This document shows, piece after piece, positions 29,248 through 41,850 of a DNA stretch of 64,000 nucleotides. The notes beneath the pieces were generated by a model. That model was not told the DNA's origin and searched no databases. It saw only the letters and a program-made list of their open reading frames with translations. The stretch comes from Dimorphilus gyrociliatus (taxonomy: Eukaryota > Animalia > Annelida). The stretch spans positions 372,001 to 436,000 of the forward strand of contig CAJFCJ010000015.1 of assembly GCA_904063045.1 (NCBI GenBank), in the 5' to 3' direction. The position numbers and the translations under genes are program-made. Within the stretch, counting starts at the first letter, position 1. Each line of letters begins with the position of its first letter.

Positions 29248-30144
29248 GATGTTTCCTCTTCAAATGGTTAGCATCGATTTAAACTTTATACAATTCACTT
29301 CCCTCTTTTTATGTGAATTTTATTATAATTAATCAAATTTCCATGCATTCCATATCTATGCATGTGTGCAATTTAAAGTCTATTGTGATATTTGATGTTA
29401 ATTTACTAAATCCTTTGTTTCCATATTATAGATGGCACATGCACACAAATTGATAGTCATCGCCTTTCTGGCTGTTTCCAAGGCAGTGTTTTTTTATGAA
29501 TATAACTTTATTATCGTTTATTGGATATTCAATATTGCTGTTAAATAATAATATATTTCAAATTATGATAAAAATATAAAGTTTCTGGCAATCATTTGTA
29601 AATATAAAGTAAAAAATTTCGTTATTTCTTCTTTTCCTTCTTCTTTTCCTTTTCTCTTTCTCTCTTACGTATCTTCTGTTGTAAAAAAAAAAGGCCATAA
29701 TAAAATTTTCCCTTTTTTTTTTAAATGATAAAGGCTGGATGTTTTTTTTTTTCTATCAACTCTTTTCAAGTCTTTCTTTTTTTTGATAAGACTCACTTCA
29801 TCTTTATCCTTCTTTTCTTTCTTTTCTTTCTTTTCTTTAGTCTCCCTCTTTATATCTTATTACTATTTTCCTCTTAAATTGATTATAATGAATGTTTATC
29901 TTGATTAATTAAACACATCTACATTTTTATTATTCTTGATGCTCCATTAAAACCATTCCATTTGGAATCATATAGTAGACTTCTTTTTTAAAAAAAAAAA
30001 GGTCGAAAGTTGATTTAATTCATTACAAATGTAATTTAAGATAAATTTTATAGATAAGTTTAATTTGGAAAACACGCAATAGATGTCGCTATTATGGGTT
30101 TTGTTACTAAAAGATAAGTGAAAGAAATAGCTTTTTTTTAGGGG

Positions 30145-30167
30145 CACGTGACTATATATCATGTGAC
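30145..30167 (+). promoter_or_regulatory. Tandem CLEAR-like E-box (CACGTGAC) and M-box-like site (TCATGTGAC) directly upstream of the HGSNAT ATG
   Basis: ggCACGTGAC at 30143-30152 and TCATGTGAC at 30159-30167; the predicted ATG is at 30172. The motifs match the TFEB/MITF consensus known for lysosomal genes. Confidence 0.6.
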
Positions 30168-30171
30168 TGTC

Positions 30172-33100
30172 ATGGAGGCGTATAAAACAAGTATTTTCAT
30201 AAACTTTATGGTTTTATTTATGTTTAGTAAGTTTTTATTGAAGGTTAGTAAAAGAAAAAAGTAACTTACTGAGTACTATATTGGAATTTCAGATCATTTT
30301 CAAATGGGCGTCTGTTCTTCATATAATAAATATGAAAATATATTATCGATATATATGCATCCTGAAGATACAATAATCCCAATACTTAAATCTGAAAATA
30401 TGGTTAAAGAAGAACTAAGTAAGAAGTTAGGCATTGATGAAGCTCGCCTTTCTATACAAAATCAAGCAAATTATGACTTAGTAATTCAATATAAAAGTGA
30501 TGAATGCTATCGTGTAAGTTTATCAGCTTGACTACTCTTTGCAATCAATTATTTAGCCCTTAAGGAATGTTGATAGTACTATAATACTCTTTAAATTTTG
30601 GTAAAATAGTGTTCATTTGAAGAAATCGGACTTGTTGCTGGCCAGTCCACATGGTCAACGACTATAGACACTAGATGGCCCGTCAAATTACTTGTACAGT
30701 CAAAGGGCAATGTGAATTGCAGGTAATAATTTGTCACAGGGCATACAAAAAATGACTTTACTAAATGTATTAATGCGATCACAGCGTTGTCGATTATCAC
30801 TTTAAGGAATATGGTGATTATTGGTGGACGTTTACCAAGAATAACTGTGGGGCTATAACTTTAAATAATTCGCCAAAGGATGCTTTCATACGTACGACCA
30901 ACACATATTCTTTATGAAGCAAGACGAAATCCGTTAGATCTATAGGCCTATATATGGTAACGCGCTCTGACAGTAGCTTAATTACAAACACTGTTAGTTA
31001 TGTTCCACTAGCAGAGTGGTGATTTAAGTAGGAAAAGCCGGTACTAGAGCTACGTGTCAATGAGTCACTAAATTAACGCTTCAATTAAAATCTGGTCGAT
31101 AGACGGCAACTAAATTCTTGGTCTAATTTAGGTTCAAATTAATTTTAAATAAGTATTCCATTATCTAGACATTTAGATAAACAAGAAGATATCTAAACTA
31201 TGATAAACATAAAGAAATATATATATATATATACTACTATACTTTATATAAATATTCTATATAATATACTATTATTAAAAGAAAAATAAAGACTGAATGC
31301 AGAAAAGGTCAAAGATGAACCATTTATCTTTAGTTAGTTTATTTCATATAAACCCTTAGAATACTTTGACTTTCTTGGGTTTATTGAAATGTTTAATTCT
31401 TTCTATTTCATTCATTAGACGCAGTAGTAGGTCTAATTCACTTACTAAAACAAATTTCGTGAAAGAAAGGGGAGGGGAAAAAACTAGGAAGATGAAAACA
31501 ACAGATGAGGGGGTGATGAAAAGGGAGAGAGGGGTAAGAAAGTGGAATAATAAAAAAAAAAAAAAACAAAACAAAAGAAAAAAGGCATTGGGGTAGTGTA
31601 AAAAATTTAATAAACAGTAGAATTGAGCTTGTCTCCAGGGGTTCTCTGATATTAACTATCTGACAGATTTTGTCTGTGATTATTACAACACTGGACATTT
31701 AATCATTTTAATACATTCATTCCAGCGATTTACATAACGTTGGGAGTATTAGTCGGAGTTGCCTTAATCTGGATAATCTTGAGATTTATAGTTCGGTTAG
31801 CATCTTGAAATTATTGTGGATTGTATTTTGTTTTTATAATATAATTGCTTCATAATTTATTTTAAGAAATTTACTTAAATATTTTACAAACATCTATTTA
31901 TATAAATAACTTTTCTCTTTCTTTTTAGGAGGGCGTTTTTTCAGTCGTTTCTTGTTCGTCTATCTAGAAATCGAAATGTCGTTATTGGTTCTGTAAGTAG
32001 TTGCTTGAAAAATTGGATTAGTTCTGACTTTTTTCTCCAACATGTTTTTCTTTTTTTTCCCCCTTTTTTCTTTCACTTTCCTAGGAGACATATGAAAATG
32101 CAGATGGACCTGAAGAAGTAGAACAGCCAGTTAGAGAAAGGCTAAAATCATTGGATAGTTTCAGAGGGTAATTGAATTTGTCGTTTCTTCCCCCTTTTAA
32201 AATAACGATAAACCGACAATTTCTTGGCAATTTAGTCCTCCTCCGGGAAAGGTGATTGATATATAAACTAATGGTAACTAACGTTATGTCGGCTACTTTA
32301 AGGACAACTTAAGGTTTTTCCTGTCACGTGATCCTTTTACGGTTAGATGAAAACAGAAAAGTACGACGAGAGTCACCGTCGCTATTGCGTGACAACTTTA
32401 ATCGAAAAGAAAAACCTTGGAGGGAGAATGAAGGGAATAAAGGGAAAATAAAGACGGAAGTGGAATAGGAGTTTTTAAGGTTGAAGAGATTTAAAAAAAA
32501 AAAAGGTGCTACTCACTCTCTTTACTTCTCCCTCCTCTCCTTATTTTTAGTATATAATTTGAGAACATATATTAAATAGTAGCCATACCGAATATTGTTA
32601 TCGTTAAAGAGGCACTCTTTTTTTCTCTCGAAATATACTCCACTTCAATCCAACTCCCATCTTCGACACTTATCCAAATAATTTACTTGATCAAGTCTAT
32701 ATTGAAAAACGGTTTTACGAAATATTTTTTTGCCTTTCTTTATTCTGAAGCTTGAAAGGTAAAACCTTTTAAGAGCATTAAATTTAACCAAATATTCGAT
32801 GCAGTCTTTTTCATTATTAGACGCCTTTCCCGGACTTTTAAGAGAATGAAGAAAAAAATGATGTTTACGAGCTTTCTCTTAAGCGGATTATAGTCTCTTC
32901 TGTTGTTTCTTTCTTTTTTAAAATACTCTCCTATTTTATGTATAAACAGTTTCAGTTTAGTGATAATGGTGGTAGTAAACTACAAAGGAGGCCATTATTG
33001 GTTTTTAAGACATTCGAAATGGGACGGATTAACCGTAGCCGATTTAGTGTTTCCATGGTGAGAATCTTAACGTAGCACTTAATTTTTTTTTTTATCCAGC

Positions 33101-36100
33101 TTCTCATTGGTTATTATGGTATTTGTGAATTATAACGGAGGGAAATTTTGGTTCTTCGATCATTCCATTTGGGACGGTTTAACTGTTGCCGACCTCGTTT
33201 TTCCTTGGTAGAGAAATGCACTTTTTTTTCTTAATTGAAACTCTCAAAGGGCAAGAAAATTGTTATAATTAAGTAGAACTTCGATTAAGGTTAAAACCTC
33301 ATTCTTTAAGTTCATTTCCGGAGATGTTTTGGTATTAGGACAATTAAAGTAAGAAATGAAAAAAAAATCGCAGCCATTATCATATCATTTAACAAAAAAT
33401 GTAAATAATGAAGAGACTGAAAAACAAACCTAATAATCTAGCTTCAAAAAGCAAAATAGACATAAAGGAATCAATGAAAAAGGGATTGAGAGAGCTAAGA
33501 TTAATAAATATTTATATAAAAGTCCAAAAGTGAGAGTTTCAATGACGGAAAATTGTATCAGCAAGCAACATGTACAGCTTCGTTTAGCTATTTTATTTTT
33601 TATAAATAATCACAATATCATTAAGATGGCTTCCCTTTTCCCTTTATTTTTCAAGATTAATAAAAAGCTACTTTTTATTATTTTGTTTGATTTTTGTAAT
33701 ATAAAAATTGCCGTTAATTTTTCAGTTTATTAACTTCATTTTCTTATTGTTTCTCTTTTTTTAAAACACAGGTTTACATTCATAATGGGTACTTCTATAG
33801 CTTTATCTTTTCGAAGCTTATTGAGGAAAGGGATATCGAGGTGGAGATTGATGTGGAAAGTATTTAAGCGCGCCCTTATTTTATTCGCAATAGGATTATG
33901 CCTTGGCACCTCGTCCGGTTAGCCGCTTATAGTATTATAGATAATGTCCAAAAGAAATATATAAGAGGATTTTTTTTATTATACATATTTATATACAAAC
34001 GTATTTATGTGTTTACATTTAGGTCCAATTAACATGAAAAACTTAAGGATTCCTGGGGTTCTACAACGATTAGCTCTATCCTACTTAGGTGTTGCCGCTG
34101 CTCATGTTTTCTGCTCCAAAGCTGAGGACACAAATAGGGTAACTAGAAATACTTTTTATAATAACTTTCATTTTAATATTATTAAATACTTAACGATAAA
34201 ACATCCTATTAAATTTACGTAATCAACTGTCTCTTCTTTTTTTCTTTCCTTTCTCTCTTCTCGTTTATCTTCATTTAGTACACCAACGTTTTGTGTATAT
34301 ATTCTGGTATTTCTATTTTCGAAAGACGAACAATACTATAATAAGTATAAGGAAACGTCTGTTTGCTTCGTTGAAGCTTGTTGTTCTCTTCATCTTTTTC
34401 TCTTTTCCAGTTTATTGTAGTTGAGAAAAAACAACGAGTTTTACTTAGGTATATTTTACATATATTACGCATTATGTGTATATATTAGTTTATGTTTGTA
34501 AAGAGAAAAACTATGCCTAAGCCAAAGCTTAAGTTCATTATTCACTATTGCTTTTATTATAAAATAAGATAAAATCATTTATTCTCTCTTTTCCCTTACA
34601 TATACTAATTGCCCTTTAATAATTACTGCATGTATAATACCTATTAAAGGATTTTCCTTTAATTAAACCCAATTTTAAGAATTTACTATATTAAAAATAT
34701 AATAATAAATTATATTATTACTATAGTCTTTTAGTTTTATTGATTGATTCTTGCTTTTACTGTCATTTTTATTAAAAGAAGTTTATTAAATGTACATATT
34801 AATTACATTTATACTTTTAGATAAATTTCATTTATACGTAATTTAATATATAAAATACAATGGTTTTGTTTAATATCACCTAAAGATTAAAATTATAATA
34901 AGTGAATAATATTTCTTTAAACAAACTGAAAGAGAGAAAGATACGTTCTCAATCTATAAAACGTATAAATATCTATATCTATGCTGTATATATTCAGTAC
35001 ACTCAATGTACAAAGATAGATAGCCCCTATTATAAACATATAGATTGATAGATAGATTTATAAATATTAATAATTTGTATTATATTTAGTTAGAAAAGAA
35101 CAAAGAAAGTATTAATATTGTTGAAAAACCTTGAAAGTAAATAATGTTAAATAATTCATAGCGATAATCATTTTATGAAGTTTATTCTTGTAAGGAAATA
35201 AAAGAAAACCTTTTATACATAAACTTATTGAGAATACATATTATGTACTTTTTATATTTTATACATAATAAGTATTATATACATTTATGAATAACAAACA
35301 TGTTTATTTCATATTTATTAAATTGAGTGTCTAAATTTTCTTTTGTCTATACGTTTTACATTAATTTTCCGTACTCTATTACTATTTATATCTTGTTTCA
35401 GTAGTTCTAGAAAGACAATTTAATAATTGTCAGCTTAAATATCATTTCTAGCTAAACTATTCTAGAATTTAAAACAAAATTTTCTTTTTAATTAGCAAAA
35501 ATCAATCGATAAAATGAAATTAATAAAAGTAGGACAACGAAGTAACCATCTAGTCAATGTAATATTAATGTATATAGTACTTTTCAATGCACACCTACTG
35601 CTGTATAAATGGTTATTTAGTTATGAAATTAGTATACATTTATTTAAATATTCTTTCTAACATGAGAAAATTAAAATATATCTTTAGTTATTATTCTGTA
35701 AACGTAAGGATAGTCCTACTAGACAATCTAATAACGACTGACTCATCAGTCATTTCCCTTCGCCTTTTTTTTTTTATTTTTTTAAACTCGTTTCGTCTGA
35801 TTTCTTATTTATTTCGTACTAATCTTTTTAGTTGTATGTTTCTCAGTTTATTTCATTCTTGTTTAAAAAACGAAAAAGAAAAGTAATTAGTATAAAAAGT
35901 AATTAAAAAGAAACTTTTAATGGTGCGAGACTAGAGTCCCATATAACTAATTAAACTTCCCATATAAGAGTAGACAAGAACATTTCTTTTTCTTATTAGT
36001 CGCTGGCTGATAATGATTTATTTTATATTTTTCTAAGGTCAAATTTATATCATAAATATAGTATGTCCTATATATTCGAGGAGAAATTCTCAACATTTAT

Positions 36101-39100
36101 ACTAAAAACAGTCATAGGTTGCGACTGTTAAAACCAAGTTTGACGCTCATTTAAATAAAAAAAATGCCGAATCAACATCTTTATTCAACTCTAGAAAGGA
36201 TTTGTTAAGGTTGTTTGCAGATAAAGTGATTCTCTACATGCTCAATTTTAAATTTCCTGAATGATCTTCAAATAAACTACATTACTTTGTACTAGTTTTC
36301 CATCCTCTCTGTCCTTACTCTTGTTATATCTTAAAAACAATTGGTTACGTTTAGTTGGCTCCTTTATAAATGGATATATATTTTAAAAAAGAAACTAGTT
36401 CGTAACAAGCTAATAAACTTAATATTTTAATATTTAATAACTTTTACGAACAAAGTTAAGATTAAAAGATAGTTAATGAGCCAATTTAGACCCTGGAAAT
36501 ACAAATTTCATGAGAATCTTTACTATTTCTATCGTTCTTTAAAGGGTAAATTATTAATCTTAAAACTTACTAAAAAGTAATTATGAATTTTACTGAAATG
36601 ATATTTTAAACTAAATTAATAATGTCTTTATACTTAAATATATCAGAAAACATAAGTAATATATATATATATACAGTATATATATATAAATTTATATATA
36701 TACTCTCCTGTATATCTATATACACATATTAATGATAAAGAAAATGGTTGGGGTTCCTACTCTTATTAATAAATACCATATTTATTGCCCTAGATAAACT
36801 AGTCAAGTTAATGAAATCGTTTAATAGCAATTTTTTTATCAATTTTTCCACTGTTTTCAACTCAACTTCATATTCTCTCTCTCTCTTTCTCTCTTTCTCT
36901 CTCTCTCTTTTTGATACCCTATTCCCTCTTTCCCAACTGAAATTAACTTTGCAATAAGTTCCAAATGTCTCCTAGGTGTTTTGATAGATATTTTATTAAA
37001 AACCTACATTTTTCTCTGAAAGCTTTAGAGTATTTTGTCATTTTTTTTATTTCTTGATTTTCTTTATCCTTTGCTTCGAGTATTAAATAGTTTCCTTTTA
37101 CCAATCAAAACTGTCGGTTTTATGTCGGAACGCCTAAAAAAGATTAACTGGCTCCTTAGAGCGTTTCTTCTGCACAAAATGCAAATAGATCACCTTTTTA
37201 CAGTTAAAAGAACAATCATTCTTTTTGTTCATTTGAGAGGGGACAGAAGGATGTTTGAGTGAATTCTTCTATAGGCTTAATTATTAGAGATTGACTAAAG
37301 AGACGCTTTTTTATCATAAATGTACAGTTAAGAGGTTTTGCAGCTCGGTAAATTTATATACGCTATACATATCAATTGTCATATATGTATAGTTATTATC
37401 CTGATCTCGTTTTAGTACACGAAATGGGGAACAATAAGAGATATACTGTTATACTGGCCGGAATGGCTAATTATGTTCGCCCTACTGGCTCTCCATCTTT
37501 GTTTAACATTTTTATTGAATGTACCCGGCTGTCCAAAGTGAGTACATGACTTTTCTTCAAAAAAAATAAAGCAATTATATTTTCTTTCCTCCTACCTTTC
37601 AAATTTTTCTCAGAGGATACCTGGGACCTGGAGGATTACACGAAAACTCGAGTTATTGGAATTGTACTGGCGGAGCTGCAGGTTATATAGATAGAAAGCT
37701 GCTTGGCGATAATCATATTTATCAGAGTCCTACAGCGAAAGTAATTTATATAGACGGCGATCTATACTGTAAATCTTTATACCGCAATATATTCCTACAG
37801 GAATTGTACAAGACGACCGTTCCGTACGATCCGGAAGGTATTTTAGGCACGTTCACGTCGATATTTATGTGCTTTCTCGGATTACAGGTTTAATCCTTCT
37901 TCTAGTGTTGTAACAATATGACAATTGTATTCTTTAGTCACTCTACTATTCTCTTTTTTTGTACACTTTATCCCCTTTTTCTTATCTTAACAGGCCGGAA
38001 AAATACTCTTACACTACACGGGCAGGGTGCACAGGATTTCTAGATGGTTGATATGGGCTGTGATCACGGTATGCATTTCTTTTTACATGGTCCAACGCCT
38101 CCTTACTCGAGCCGTGTCTAGTTCAAAGATGGCGTTAATCCGCTTATATTTTGCGTTACTAGTATTGTTTTTATACTTTTTTTTACGCAAATCTATACAA
38201 CAATTTTCTATTTTTCTTCCCTTCCTCTTTCCGTCTTCAAAAAATTCATCAATTTTTTCTAATGATTTTGTCAATAGGGTAATTAGAAAATCTCATTATC
38301 GTCGATAACACTCTCTTCACCCAACTATTTTAACTTATTTAGCCAATCATAAACATTGCGTACCCTTGTTACAGTCTGATTTATTCAAGTGTAATAAGTA
38401 TGTAAATAGTTGCAAGATGCATGAAATATTCCTGTTAGTAACCCGGATTCAATCGAATTAAGTTAATATCAGGACAAAATTCGCCTACTACGTTTTGGGT
38501 CATATAAACTCTATGAATATAGAATGCAATTATATTAGCCTTCCCGATTTTCCTCCAACTAATTTATAAGCAATTTTCATGTCGTACCTCTCTTTAAAAA
38601 TGGCAGTATAAAAATTAATTGGGTAACTCCCTTTTGCTATCATTTCACGGCATTATCACAAAGAATAGCCCTTAATTTCTCTTGGAATTTACGAAAAGGA
38701 GAAGAGAAATGCCTACTCGTATCAATACATACCTTCCATATTGCGTATGGAAGTTTATCAGCTTTAAGGATTAAAGCTTATGCCTCATTTTTGCAATACT
38801 TTCTCTATAACTCATAATAATCGACAAGATTATGCCGCAAGAAAAAATTTCAGATAACAAACATATACTTAATATATTTATAAACATATATTGACTAATA
38901 TATACAGTATATATATATATATAGTGCAATCAGCACGTATAGTAAAATTACGTGTCTATTTCTGGTTCACATGGCCAGTAGAAGAGTGGCAAAAGAAGCG
39001 AAATTAGTTTTACAATATTATAGGCTTTTAACGTAAATTTGCTAGAAATATCTAATCGTTAGTCAAGGGAAGAGGAACAGAATGATTGGTAAATTTTTAG

Positions 39101-39732
39101 ACGTTGATAGATTATCTAATCGAAAAGGTCTTTTCAATTTCATGAGTCTTCATACGAATTGTCTAAATAGTTTTTTAATAAACAATATTTTCATCGTTTA
39201 TTCAATGATTTTATATTTTTTTCCATAGGGAATAATTGGAGGAGGATTGTGCGGTTTCAAGCAATTTGGCGGTGTTATACCTTTGAATAAGAATCTATGG
39301 TCCCTGTCTTTTATTCTCTCGCTGTCCTCCATGGCATACATTCTTTTGATTTTGTTCTATGTTCTTATAGACATTAGTCGCATCTGGTCAGGATCACCGT
39401 TTATTTACCCTGGTAAGCGTCTCTTGTTTAAACAAACTAAACTCTCAACCTAACCACCCACACTATCTCTTTCCTTCCTCCTCTTTACTATTTTCCCCTT
39501 TTTGCTTTATATTTCGTTTCTCTTTTCTATTCTAATGTCAAAATCAATTCGGACAGGAATGAATTCGATAGCCGTCTACGTCTGCCATTCTGTGTTTTCT
39601 AGGTACTTTCCGGTTAGTTGGCAAGTTCCTAACAACCATACAGCACGGATGGCAATGTCAGTTTATGGCTCAGCACTATGGACTATTTTTGCTTATTTTT
39701 TATACTATAAAAAGATTTTCATTAAAATATGA
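30172..39732 (+). CDS. HGSNAT: Heparan-alpha-glucosaminide N-acetyltransferase, 16 coding exons per isoform, 617 aa
   Basis: Exons: 30172-30226, 30293-30513, 30610-30722, 30785-30891, 31726-31795, 31929-31992, 32085-32167, [32950-33057 or 33100-33207], 33772-33917, 34023-34138, 37416-37537, 37614-37740, 37801-37887, 37994-38068, 39229-39412, 39557-39732. Total 1854 nt with one alternative exon. Family motifs: [94 protein letters not shown]. Confidence 0.95.
32950..33057 (+). CDS. HGSNAT: HGSNAT exon 8A (mutually exclusive exon candidate)
   Basis: aaacag acceptor and gtgaga donor, 108 nt, phase 2-2; encodes [35 protein letters not shown](W). Confidence 0.88.
33100..33207 (+). CDS. HGSNAT: HGSNAT exon 8B (mutually exclusive exon candidate)
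   Basis: Poly-T plus atccag acceptor and gtagag donor, 108 nt, phase 2-2; encodes [35 protein letters not shown](W). Confidence 0.88.
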
Positions 39733-41850
39733 TCGTATATATGTATTAATACATATCAAGTAATTGATTATCGTTACTCCCTTGGAAGCTGTTGTATAGC
39801 CAAAAATTGTATATAAAATAACTTTGACGTCATAACAAAAAACACGTGTTTGCAGTATTCACCCTGTTTTCGTTCGATTGCCTATCGTTCCATAAAAACA
39901 CGAGGATTCCAAAACATTCCATAAGATAATTTGTTGAATGACAGCTTTGATATAAACACTTTCTATGCAAAGAATACATTGCCGAGTTGACCTTGCTCAA
40001 TATGGGGGATTATCCCCAGTGATAATCTTACAGGTTGCTCTTTAATTCTTTTAGATAAATAAGTTGGAAAAAACATTTGCAGTAGAGTTTAAACAGTATC
40101 TTTCTTTTATCTATTCAAATATCACTATTACAGCTTTAATAAAAAAACCTATCAAACAAGATCATCGATGTAAATATCACCGGCCATCACCTAATTATGA
40201 GTCTATTGACAAATTTACTAATACCACGTGACCTTACAACTCTGTTTTTTTTTCTTTTACGCCCACTCTGTTTTTTTCAATTTCATACTATAAAAAGACT
40301 AATGACTACAAAGAGATCAATTGGGGATTCGGAAAGTGTCGAAATGCTAAGTTTCTAAGTTAACGAAGGGTGGTAAGGGGAGGGAGTGAAGAAAAACACT
40401 TTTCTTAAGTATTAAATCCTTAGGCCTATTCCTTACTATTTAAAAACTGAAATAAACTTTAAAATCGTATCCCTAGAGATGAAATAAAAAACTGGATCAA
40501 TTATAGAATTGTAGTGCAATTATATATTGCATCATGACAAACGTTCTTCGACATTGCAAAACTCGGGATGTCTTCAAGCGTAAAAAAAAATTTATTGGTA
40601 CTCTTCCCTTTTTTACCATCCATTATCCTTTTTTTTTCATTTATTTTATCTCTGACCAAAGCCAACTAGAATAAGAGTTACTTTTTAATAGGAAATGTCA
40701 CATAGTCCTTTCTTCACTGTCCTATCATGAACTAAACAAGTTTAACACTGTTTACAAATCAGGCTGGGAAAGCACAAAATGATGGAAGGTTTAGCATCCT
40801 TCCACTCTTTTATAATTTAAGAGCGACAGGAAGAGAGCAAGAGTGGGTACCGAAGGGTCAGGAAAAGGAAGAAATTTCATCAGAAATGGGGGATGTAATT
40901 TTCAACAATTCAATGACTAAATACATAGCCTAAGAGGAAAAATCGTGGCAACGGCAAAAAATCGAACAGCCAATATTCACCACTGCTAGATCACATTAAC
41001 GTTTAATGCTCGACGAAAATCCTTCGATCTGTACCGGCCTATAATCCTTTACTGAGCTTTTTCTATCACATCAGCGCCCTTGACCGAAAAAGTATAATTA
41101 TACAACGCTCGTTATATACGCAATATATCGTATAATTAGAGCCGCGTTTTCGGTATCCGGCAATCAAAAAAAATTCCCTCTCGTTCACGGTTTTAATGAG
41201 AAAACGGTTCAAAGGATTACGGAAGAAATTTCTAACAGCTCCTTCAACTGCAACAAAGCTCCTTGTAAAAATAAATCATAACAAATATGTCTCATATAAG
41301 TGAGCATCTTAAAGCAATTAATTCATCTATATATCATATATAGGGCATAATGTCGAATACAGTCTATATTATATATTTTGGATGCGAGAATAGTAAAAAG
41401 ATGGAGTGAAGGAAAAGAGAGAGTGAGTGAGTGAGCGTATTTATCTATACATTATTACTTATAAAAAAGTATTTCTAAATATAGGTATTGGCATTGATAT
41501 GGATATAAAGGCTAACAGTTTCCTTTTAAGCTCATCTTTCCCTTTCTTTCTACCTGTCTGACTGCATTTTTTTTAACCAAAAGTATTTGGCCCCATAGGA
41601 ATTGATAGTATGGTCTTAATAGTACGCAAATTACCTACTCTTCTATCTAAATCTACACCACATTTTAGCAGAATCTCTATTAGGTAACGTGATTTTTCGA
41701 CTCTAAGAAATGTAACGCTATGGCTACATAAAAGAATTGAATAACCCCCTATTCATCTTGGCCTGAACTCAGGAATACTGTAGTAAATTAAGTTACTTGT
41801 CTAGCCGATTGGAAATTTATGCGTCGCTCCGCTTTATCATTTCATACAAT

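What the first reader, a model, noticed from the sequence alone, without database searches (positions are those of the whole stretch)
32950..33207. HGSNAT catalytic exon is duplicated as a pair of probable mutually exclusive exons: two alternative active sites from one gene
Seen in sequence: two tandem 108-nt exons, both phase 2-2, both open and with canonical splice sites. They are separated by only 42 nt (33058-33099), shorter than any intron in my models here (minimum about 60 nt). Branch-point-like CTTAAC (33066-33071) and CTTAAT (33079-33084) lie within about 27 nt of the exon A donor. The copies differ at many synonymous positions but at only 7 of 35 residues (V/F, K/N, H/K, Y/F, L/F, R/D, K/I), consistent with selection on both. 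Established knowledge: the human HGSNAT segment [30 protein letters not shown] carries N258, the acetylated H269 and D279, and a too-short donor-to-branch-point distance is a known way to enforce mutually exclusive splicing. Both copies keep N, H and D. All substitutions cluster around them, including a charge reversal (R vs D) just before the catalytic His and K vs I two residues after it. Inference: the gene makes two lysosomal acetyltransferase isoforms with a more basic (A) or more acidic/hydrophobic (B) luminal active-site loop. This could tune the enzyme to differently sulfated heparan chains, other amino sugars or lysosomal pH. I do not know of such a switch in HGSNAT.
Basis: partly seen in the sequence, partly recalled or inferred. 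Interest (0 to 1): 0.92.

Follow-up and report, generated by a model that had tools for sequence, protein, structure and literature searches.

The report
Two swappable catalytic exons in HGSNAT
This animal's gene for the lysosomal enzyme that acetylates heparan sulfate holds two alternative copies of the exon carrying its catalytic histidine; RNA from close relatives uses one or the other, never both spliced together, and snails and another worm have the same basic-versus-neutral pair, so it is a real enzyme switch whose effect is untested.

Summary
Two 108-nt exons (32950-33057, 33100-33207) lie 42 nt apart and differ at 7 of 35 residues. Both match human HGSNAT 278-311 and keep N286, H297 and D307.

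RNA contigs from close relatives (90-99% identical; none is shown to be the window's own species) join the upstream exon to A or to B, and A or B to the downstream exon. No A-to-B joint and no double skip appeared in 8 runs. Two runs also hold RNA colinear across the spacer while the long flanking introns are uncovered. This fits a spacer that cannot be spliced out.

Synonymous sites between A and B are saturated (pS 0.89, pN 0.17). In a relative, 11 of 11 changes in exon B are synonymous.

The arrangement is not unique. An annelid-like contig has the same pair with a 60-nt spacer. RefSeq lists equal-length isoforms X1/X2 that differ only in this exon in four gastropods. In all six pairs the first copy is basic (+2/+3, basic residue before the catalytic His) and the second neutral or acidic (-1/0).

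I found no paper describing this. It is a new member of a known kind (mutually exclusive exons from tandem duplication). Any catalytic difference is untested.

The parts
32085..32167 (+). Constitutive upstream HGSNAT exon (ends ...LKSLDSFRG, cytosolic loop before TM2). Its donor at 32168 is used for both A and B.
   Evidence: Contig pieces and joints 32167>32950 and 32167>33100; the reading frame stays open.
32950..33057 (+). Exon A, the basic version of the luminal end of TM2, luminal loop 1 with the catalytic His, and the start of TM3 (motif [15 protein letters not shown]). Loop net charge is +2.
   Evidence: Joined to the upstream and downstream exons in runs X7, X11, X13 and X14. Charge.
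33058..33099 (+). 42-nt spacer intron: GTGAGA donor, branch-point-like CTTAAC (33066-33071) and CTTAAT (33078-33083), a T-run and a CAG acceptor. If retained, TGA follows the Trp codon at once.
   Evidence: Sequence. No 33057>33100 joint in 8 runs. 100-nt contigs are colinear over 33030-33128 in X7 and X14. The stop is shown.
33100..33207 (+). Exon B, the neutral-to-acidic version of the same segment (motif [15 protein letters not shown]). Loop net charge is -1. It is closer to the common invertebrate consensus.
   Evidence: Joints 32167>33100 and 33207>33772 in X5, X7 and X14. In X4, 11 of 11 differences are synonymous.
33772..33917 (+). Constitutive downstream exon (rest of TM3 onward). Its acceptor is shared by A and B.
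   Evidence: Joints 33057>33772 and 33207>33772, then 33917>34023; open frame.
30610..39729 (+). Approximate extent of the HGSNAT gene seen in the window. The luminal-domain exons start at about 30610 and the last coding exon ends at about 39729. The 5' end was not defined.
   Evidence: RNA contigs; tblastn of annotated HGSNAT proteins at 40-53% identity over more than 500 aa.

Best explanation
This is a pair of mutually exclusive exons made by tandem duplication of the HGSNAT exon that encodes the luminal end of TM2 (acetyl-binding Asn), luminal loop 1 (catalytic His) and the start of TM3 (the Asp of the His-Asp dyad). Shown: the upstream donor is spliced to the acceptor of A or of B, and the donor of A or of B is spliced to the downstream acceptor. 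This gives two full-length isoforms that differ at seven residues in and next to the catalytic loop. Inferred: the 42-nt spacer cannot be removed because the branch point for B's acceptor lies at most about 25 nt from A's donor (steric exclusion, as in alpha-tropomyosin exons 2/3). When both exons are defined, the spacer stays in and a TGA directly after exon A ends the frame, so only single-exon mRNAs are productive. Inferred with less confidence: the isoforms differ in catalytic behaviour. A places R before and K two residues after the His, plus K and H earlier in the loop (net +2). B has D and I at those two places (net -1). This should shift the pKa of the His or the attraction for the polyanionic substrate at the luminal entrance. 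A also keeps the Tyr that in the human enzyme hydrogen-bonds to the luminal domain; B has Phe there.
For: Anatomy and residues. Splicing: X7 and X14 each show all four single-exon joints. X11 and X13 carry contigs with upstream>A>downstream. X5 shows only B at high depth (84-232). No A>B joint and no double-skip joint appeared in 8 runs. Spacer: X7 and X14 each hold a 100-nt contig colinear over 33030-33128 (depth 5 and 8.6). In X14 the 782-nt and 564-nt flanking introns have depth 0, so this is not DNA or bulk pre-mRNA. The smallest RNA-supported intron in the gene is 62 nt. Selection: pS 0.89 versus pN 0.17, Fisher p 3e-10. Exon B in X4 has 11 of 11 differences synonymous. The frame is open with A or with B. 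Recurrence: the same 108-nt exon is duplicated in L001 with a 60-nt spacer. It is also duplicated in Physella, Littorina, Babylonia and Pomacea, where RefSeq isoforms of equal length differ only here. In all six pairs the first copy is +2/+3 with a basic residue before the His, and the second is -1/0. Structural roles: N286 holds the acetyl carbonyl, the H297-D307 dyad lowers the His pKa to about 4, and loop LL1 lines the luminal entrance and touches the luminal domain, with a Y264-S162 hydrogen bond (PMC11199644; PMC11357348).
Against: The RNA evidence comes from assembled contigs of close relatives (90-99% identical), not from raw reads of the window's own species. Contigs show presence, not absence, so a rare A>B joint could be missed. 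Contig depths do not add up cleanly, so the share of spacer-retaining RNA is uncertain. In the gastropods the two copies are 808 and 1049 nt apart, so steric exclusion cannot be the general mechanism and other controls may also act here. Some animals do splice introns of about 40-50 nt, and I could not measure this genome's minimum beyond a few introns. No enzymatic data exist for either isoform. The residue before the His varies widely among single-copy species (D, N, K, R, H, E, A, Q, S), so it may tolerate change without a large effect.
Confidence: 0.8

Rival explanations
1. The two exons are truly alternative but enzymatically equivalent. The duplication would persist because it splits expression between tissues or stages, or simply by drift, not because the active sites differ.
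For: The positions that differ are among the most variable of this segment across animals. N, H and D and the whole TM3 start are identical in A and B. Usage differs strongly between runs: X5 shows B only, X11 and X13 show A.
Against: The same polarity appears in six of six pairs from at least three lineages: a basic first copy and a neutral or acidic second copy, with the switch directly before the catalytic His. Non-synonymous change is held far below the saturated synonymous change. The caenogastropod basic copy is nearly identical in three genera.
Confidence: 0.25
2. Exclusivity is set mainly by something other than intron length, such as competing RNA structures or exon-specific splicing regulators. 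The short spacer would be incidental.
For: The gastropod pairs have 808- and 1049-nt spacers yet are annotated as alternatives. A 25-nt, 80% complementary pairing exists between 32488-32512 and the spacer's branch-point and T-run region 33072-33096.
Against: That pairing is mostly an A-run against a T-run in 30% G+C DNA, and its conservation could not be checked. The spacer is shorter than any supported intron here. Spacer-retaining RNA is seen and A>B splicing is not. L001 also has a short spacer of 60 nt. First-reader notes report other pairs in this genome with 34-48-nt spacers (unverified).
Confidence: 0.2
3. One copy is a dead or unused duplicate (pseudo-exon), and the gene makes a single enzyme.
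For: X5 shows only B at high depth. A carries two unusual residues at otherwise conserved positions: V for F at exon position 8 and L for F at position 19.
Against: A is spliced to both neighbours in four runs, and B in three. Both are open with intact splice sites and catalytic residues. pN/pS is 0.19 with saturated synonymous sites.
Confidence: 0.03
4. Both exons are normally included together, giving a protein with a repeated 36-residue segment.
For: 108 nt is divisible by three, so spliced co-inclusion would keep the frame.
Against: No 33057>33100 joint in 8 runs. The only RNA linking A and B retains the spacer, which has an immediate stop. An extra half-helix, loop and half-helix would disturb the membrane topology of a conserved 11-TM fold.
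Confidence: 0.03

Closest known systems
Alpha-tropomyosin exons 2/3, mutually exclusive by branch-point proximity (Smith and Nadal-Ginard 1989, as cited in PMC7969005). The same criterion, donor to branch point under 50 bp, is used in the human survey PMC5740500.
   Same: Two adjacent alternative exons whose intervening intron cannot be spliced because the branch point sits too close to the upstream donor.
   Different: Here the whole intron is only 42 nt, rather than a longer intron with a distant branch point. The exons are homologous duplicates encoding an enzyme's catalytic loop. The branch point was not mapped.
RefSeq model isoforms X1/X2 of HGSNAT-like genes in gastropods: Physella acuta XP_059165341/XP_059165342, Littorina saxatilis XP_070185610/XP_070185611, Babylonia areolata XP_076460077/XP_076460078, Pomacea canaliculata XP_025092519/XP_025092526.
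   Same: The same 108-nt exon in the same phase is duplicated in tandem. The isoforms have equal length and differ only in this exon. The first copy is basic with R or K before the His, and the second is neutral or acidic.
   Different: The spacers measured in Physella and Babylonia are 0.8-1.0 kb, so another exclusivity mechanism must act there. The exon tree suggests separate duplications rather than orthology with A and B (weak data). These are database models only, and I found no published description.
Enzyme isoform switches by homologous mutually exclusive exons, for example ketohexokinase A/C, pyruvate kinase M1/M2 and OGDH exons 4a/4b (PMC7969005); the first two are from general knowledge.
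   Same: Tandem-duplicated exons swap a functional segment of an enzyme and change kinetic or regulatory properties without changing the fold.
   Different: In HGSNAT the swapped segment contains the catalytic His, the acetyl-binding Asn and the dyad Asp themselves, and the enzyme is a lysosomal membrane protein. No functional difference has been measured.
Human HGSNAT (PDB 8vkj, 8jkv, 8tu9), single-copy exon.
   Same: The N286/H297/D307 triad and the flanking TM2-LL1-TM3 segment are 70-80% identical to A and B.
   Different: The human loop has G, K, Y, F, K, S at six of the seven variable positions, a mixture of A-like and B-like states. No alternative exon is reported in the papers I searched.

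Membership tests
HGSNAT (heparan-alpha-glucosaminide N-acetyltransferase, TNAT fold; Pfam PF07786/PF16401) | Sequence similarity to HGSNAT along the transmembrane domain | tested here: met
   Exon A against PDB HGSNAT chains, E 1e-11. tblastn of annotated HGSNAT proteins covers the gene at 40-53% identity over more than 500 aa. The gene tree places it among animal HGSNATs. Pfam on single-exon pieces of 35-63 aa gave nothing because the pieces are too short.
HGSNAT (heparan-alpha-glucosaminide N-acetyltransferase, TNAT fold; Pfam PF07786/PF16401) | Catalytic His, acetyl-binding Asn and dyad Asp (H297, N286, D307) present | tested here: met
   All three are kept in both A and B. Their roles are taken from PMC11199644.
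HGSNAT (heparan-alpha-glucosaminide N-acetyltransferase, TNAT fold; Pfam PF07786/PF16401) | Acetyl-CoA:glucosaminide N-acetyltransferase activity in lysosomes | not testable with these tools
   Needs expression and an enzyme assay.
Mutually exclusive exons from tandem exon duplication | Adjacent homologous exons of the same length and phase | tested here: met
   108 nt each, 80% amino-acid and 69% nucleotide identity, AG/GT on both.
Mutually exclusive exons from tandem exon duplication | Each exon is spliced on its own to the same flanking exons | tested here: met
   All four joints are present in X7 and X14, A joints in X11 and X13, and B joints in X5. These are close relatives, not the same species.
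Mutually exclusive exons from tandem exon duplication | The two exons are not spliced together, and not both skipped, in mature mRNA | tested here: inconclusive
   No 33057>33100 or 32167>33772 joint in 8 runs. The data are contigs, which drop rare forms. Raw-read counts were not available.
Mutually exclusive exons from tandem exon duplication | Both copies are under purifying selection | tested here: met
   pN 0.17 versus pS 0.89 between the copies. Exon B has 11 of 11 synonymous changes in X4, and exon A is identical or nearly so in X11, X13 and X14.
Steric-hindrance type of mutual exclusion | Donor-to-branch-point distance below the spliceosome's minimum (about 50 nt; PMC5740500) | tested here: met
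   The whole spacer is 42 nt, and the candidate branch adenosines lie 12 and 24 nt from the donor. The branch point itself was not mapped.
Steric-hindrance type of mutual exclusion | The spacer is unspliceable in vivo, and lengthening it allows co-inclusion | not testable with these tools
   The evidence is indirect only: spacer-retaining contigs in X7 and X14 and no A>B joint.

The most novel reading that the evidence does not exclude
The catalytic exon of HGSNAT has been duplicated independently several times in lophotrochozoans: this lineage, the L001 lineage, caenogastropods and Physella. Each time the copies sorted into a basic and a neutral or acidic version of the loop that carries the catalytic His. 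That would be convergent evolution of a charge switch that retunes the pKa of the His or the substrate preference of a lysosomal membrane enzyme, for example for different lysosomal pH or differently sulfated chains in different tissues.
Probability: 0.3. Interest if true: 0.75.

Novelty: new member of a known kind. Interest (0 to 1): 0.6.

Why it matters
HGSNAT is the enzyme lost in Sanfilippo syndrome type C. Its mechanism is still debated: a ternary complex or an acetyl-histidine intermediate, and how a His can act at lysosomal pH. Here nature supplies matched pairs of the catalytic loop within one protein background, differing mainly in charge next to that His, and the contrast recurs in at least three animal lineages. 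Comparing the two isoforms would test directly how the local charge sets the His pKa, the pH optimum and the binding of sulfated substrate. The locus is also a clean example of exon exclusion by a 42-nt spacer, with the expected dead-end product (spacer retained, immediate stop) visible in RNA. The general phenomenon of mutually exclusive duplicated exons is well known, and first-reader notes suggest it is common in this genome, so the value lies in the particular enzyme and the recurring charge pattern.

Tried and rejected
- Pfam scan of single-exon translations (35-63 aa) found no family because the pieces are too short. Family assignment rests on the PDB phmmer hit and on tblastn with annotated HGSNATs.
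- Rfam scan of 30000-40500 gave only a sub-threshold mir-297 match at 36660-36725 on the minus strand (E 0.096), taken as chance.
- Inverted-repeat scan of the two introns for docking or selector pairs: most hits are A-run against T-run. The one touching the spacer (32488-32512 with 33072-33096) could not be tested for conservation.
- A profile made of a Capitella protein plus window exon pieces, meant to pull out the window's own annotated protein or near relatives, found only relatives at 40-47% identity. I could not check whether this species' own annotation lists both isoforms.
- A search with the double-copy ORF P0001 for other read-through double copies found none.
- Loci of Lamellibrachia, Capitella, Antedon and the ENA contig L002 each hold a single copy within the stretch fetched: the whole gene, or 5 kb either side for L002.
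- P0007 and P0261 were not on record for locus retrieval.
- P0009 turned out to be a transcript contig without introns.
- A Jukes-Cantor dS could not be computed because pS exceeds 0.75.
- Assembly artefact was rejected: the copies are 31% divergent, and the A-spacer-B order is seen in independent contigs.
- Paralogous genes as the source of the A and B transcripts were rejected: both exons sit between the same flanking exons in the window and form a bubble in single runs.
Full report
**What is in the sequence**

Two 108-nt segments lie at 32950-33057 (A) and 33100-33207 (B), separated by 42 nt. Each follows an AG and precedes a GT. Both are open in the same phase and encode 35 complete codons plus a split Trp.

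- The peptides differ at seven positions: V/F, K/N, H/K, Y/F, L/F, R/D and K/I.
- 74 of 108 nt are identical. Of the 33 differences within the 35 complete codons, 24 are at third codon positions.
- Exon A aligns to human HGSNAT residues 278-311 (PDB 8vkj, 8jkv; E 1e-11). Its Asn, His and Asp fall on N286, H297 and D307.
Two details are off: CTTAAT is at 33078-33083, and the substitutions cluster around the Asn and His but not the Asp.

**Is it one intact gene?**

Proteins annotated as HGSNAT align along the window from about 30600 to 39729 at 40-53% identity. Joining the RNA-supported exons 30610-30719, 30782-30891, 31726-31795, 31929-31992, 32085-32167, A or B, 33772-33917 and 34023-34138 gives an open frame with either exon. 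The frame also stays open with both exons or with neither, because 108 is divisible by three. Reading-frame loss therefore cannot enforce exclusivity. If the spacer is retained, TGG is followed at once by TGA.

**RNA evidence**

No run is shown to be the window's own species. The runs that hold the locus are coral or marine metatranscriptomes and coded organisms whose contigs are 90-99% identical to the window. I laid eight runs on the region.

| Run | Upstream>A | Upstream>B | A>downstream | B>downstream | Contig colinear over spacer (33030-33128) |
|---|---|---|---|---|---|
| X7 | 7.0 | 3.5 | 4.5 | 14.2 | 5 |
| X14 | 6.0 | 2.0 | 4.6 | 5.0 | 8.6 |
| X5 | not seen | 84 | not seen | 232 | not seen |

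(Values are contig depths.)

- X11 has one contig running upstream exon > A > downstream exon. X13 has one running A > downstream exon and beyond. Exon A is identical to the window in both.
- No run shows 33057>33100 (A spliced to B) or 32167>33772 (both skipped).
- In X14 the long flanking introns have zero depth. The colinear contig is therefore not DNA contamination or bulk pre-mRNA. It is most simply RNA in which both exons were defined and the spacer could not be removed.
- Contig depths are noisy and do not add up, so I do not quantify this form.
- Contigs show presence and not absence, so a rare A>B joint cannot be excluded.

**Selection**

- Between A and B, synonymous sites are saturated (pS 0.89) while pN is 0.17 (Fisher p 3e-10). 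The duplication is old and both copies have been kept as coding sequence.
- A more distant relative in X4 differs from exon B at 11 sites. By my reading of the codons, all 11 are third positions and synonymous.
- Exon A has 0-3 differences per about 110 nt in X11, X13, X14 and X7. Runs X11-X14 were found using exon A words, which biases this figure.

**Mechanism of exclusivity**

The spacer is shorter than any RNA-supported intron of the gene; the smallest is 62 nt, at 30720-30781. The candidate branch adenosines lie 12 and 24 nt from A's donor. The usual criterion for steric interference is a donor-to-branch-point distance under about 50 nt (PMC5740500). The classic case is alpha-tropomyosin exons 2/3 (Smith and Nadal-Ginard 1989, cited in PMC7969005).

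Spacer retention together with the absence of A>B splicing fits this model. It is not proven. The branch point is unmapped, and in gastropods the same exon pair is separated by 0.8-1.0 kb, so other controls exist at least there.

A 25-nt, 80% complementary match links 32488-32512 to the spacer's branch-point and T-run region. It is mostly A-run against T-run and could not be tested for conservation.

First-reader notes elsewhere in this genome report duplicated exon pairs with 34-48-nt spacers. I did not check them. If they hold, this architecture is a habit of the genome.

**The same duplication elsewhere**

A profile of A and B searched against 1.84 billion representative proteins gave one protein with two full matches (P0001).

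- Its contig L001 (ENA metagenome assembly, 44% G+C) carries two 108-nt copies in the same phase, 60 nt apart.
- Equal-length RefSeq isoforms X1/X2 that differ only within this exon exist in four gastropods: Physella acuta, Littorina saxatilis, Babylonia areolata and Pomacea canaliculata.
- In the Physella and Babylonia loci the two 108-nt copies are 1049 and 808 nt apart.
- Capitella, Lamellibrachia, Antedon and contig L002 have a single copy in the stretch fetched.
- A gene tree places the window's protein with the annelids Capitella and Lamellibrachia and with L001 (SH-like support 0.85), inside a mollusc-plus-annelid clade (0.94). The window is probably from an annelid or another lophotrochozoan living with corals. 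This is an inference of modest strength.

**A recurring charge pattern**

| Pair | Residue before His, copy 1 / copy 2 | Loop net charge, copy 1 / copy 2 |
|---|---|---|
| Window (A/B) | R / D | +2 / -1 |
| L001 | H / N | +2 / 0 |
| Physella | K / A | +3 / 0 |
| Littorina | R / T | +3 / -1 |
| Babylonia | R / S | +3 / 0 |
| Pomacea | R / N | +3 / -1 |

(All values. Copy 1 is genomically first where a locus was read: the window, L001, Physella and Babylonia. For Littorina and Pomacea no locus was read, so copy 1 there simply means the basic isoform.)

- Single-copy species span the same range of charge, so the pairs capture both extremes within one gene.
- In a tree of the 36-residue exon, A and B group together, along with L001 copy 1 (ultrafast bootstrap 95).
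- The caenogastropod first copies fall in one part of the tree and their second copies group together elsewhere.
- Physella's second copy groups with another heterobranch.
- This suggests several independent duplications. The segment is short, however, and gene conversion could mimic the pattern, so one ancient duplication with losses is not excluded.

**What the difference may do**

In the human structures N286 holds the acetyl carbonyl. H297 with D307 forms a dyad that lowers the His pKa to about 4. Loop LL1, which carries the His, lines the luminal entrance and contacts the luminal domain, including a hydrogen bond from Y264 (Y292 in the longer numbering) to S162 (PMC11199644; PMC11357348).

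Six of the seven A/B differences lie in LL1, and one lies in the last turn of TM2.

- A puts R before and K two residues after the His, and keeps the Tyr.
- B has D and I at those two places, and Phe instead of the Tyr.

A shift in His pKa, and so in pH optimum, or in attraction for sulfated chains is a reasonable inference. It is untested.

B is closer to the common invertebrate consensus, and A sits on the longer branch.

**Novelty**

Full-text searches for HGSNAT with "mutually exclusive" or "exon duplication" found nothing relevant. The single co-mention in an alternative-splicing paper uses Hgsnat as a qPCR reference gene. The human MXE survey does not mention HGSNAT.

The isoform pairs do exist as RefSeq models in gastropods. 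This is therefore a new, apparently undescribed member of a well-known kind, not a new kind.

**Verdict**

- Mutually exclusive use is supported by RNA of close relatives (confidence about 0.8).
- Steric exclusion by the 42-nt spacer is likely (about 0.65).
- A catalytic difference between the isoforms is plausible (about 0.4).
- Interest is moderate to high for HGSNAT enzymology and as a clean splicing example.

Noticed in passing
window 32121-32452 (and 32657-32778): RNA contigs in X5, X7 and X8 (depths 19, 6.8, 11) run from inside the upstream exon through its donor at 32168 and about 280 nt into the intron. X14 has no cover there. This may be intron retention, an alternative 3' end or a separate transcript. 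Rfam found nothing.
   Followed up: partly
window 32944-32955: There is a tandem acceptor, aaacag|tttcag, at the start of exon A. Using the second AG would remove six nt (Phe-Ser) in frame. The RNA contigs use the first one.
   Followed up: partly
L008 18437-19413 (Babylonia areolata HGSNAT-like gene): A tandem array of 13 copies (period 76/148 nt, 92-97% matches) repeats the acceptor region plus the first 47 nt of the basic exon copy, ending at the real exon. Predicted proteins P0002, P0003, P0055 and P0076 from other sources show similar partial repeats of the same exon start. This spot seems prone to tandem duplication.
   Followed up: partly
window 33854>34022 joint (run X14): One contig skips 167 nt from inside the downstream exon to the next exon, with non-canonical ends (GG..TA) and depth 6.6. 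It may be an assembly branch artefact or a minor alternative donor.
   Followed up: no
L001 4678-5412 / protein P0001: The public gene call reads straight through both exon copies and the spacer. It evidently treats the TGA after each exon as Trp, because standard translation shows stops there. This prokaryote-style call on animal DNA happened to expose the duplication.
   Followed up: yes
window 34139-37415: The intron of about 3.3 kb after exon 34023-34138 holds stretches covered by unrelated high-depth contigs in several runs, for example 35622-36015. These look like repeats or other organisms' sequences.
   Followed up: no
L003 1-861: The transcript contig that encodes P0009 (634-aa HGSNAT) also carries the end of a second 629-aa product with a weak DUF5009 hit upstream. 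This could be tandem paralogues or a chimeric assembly.
   Followed up: no
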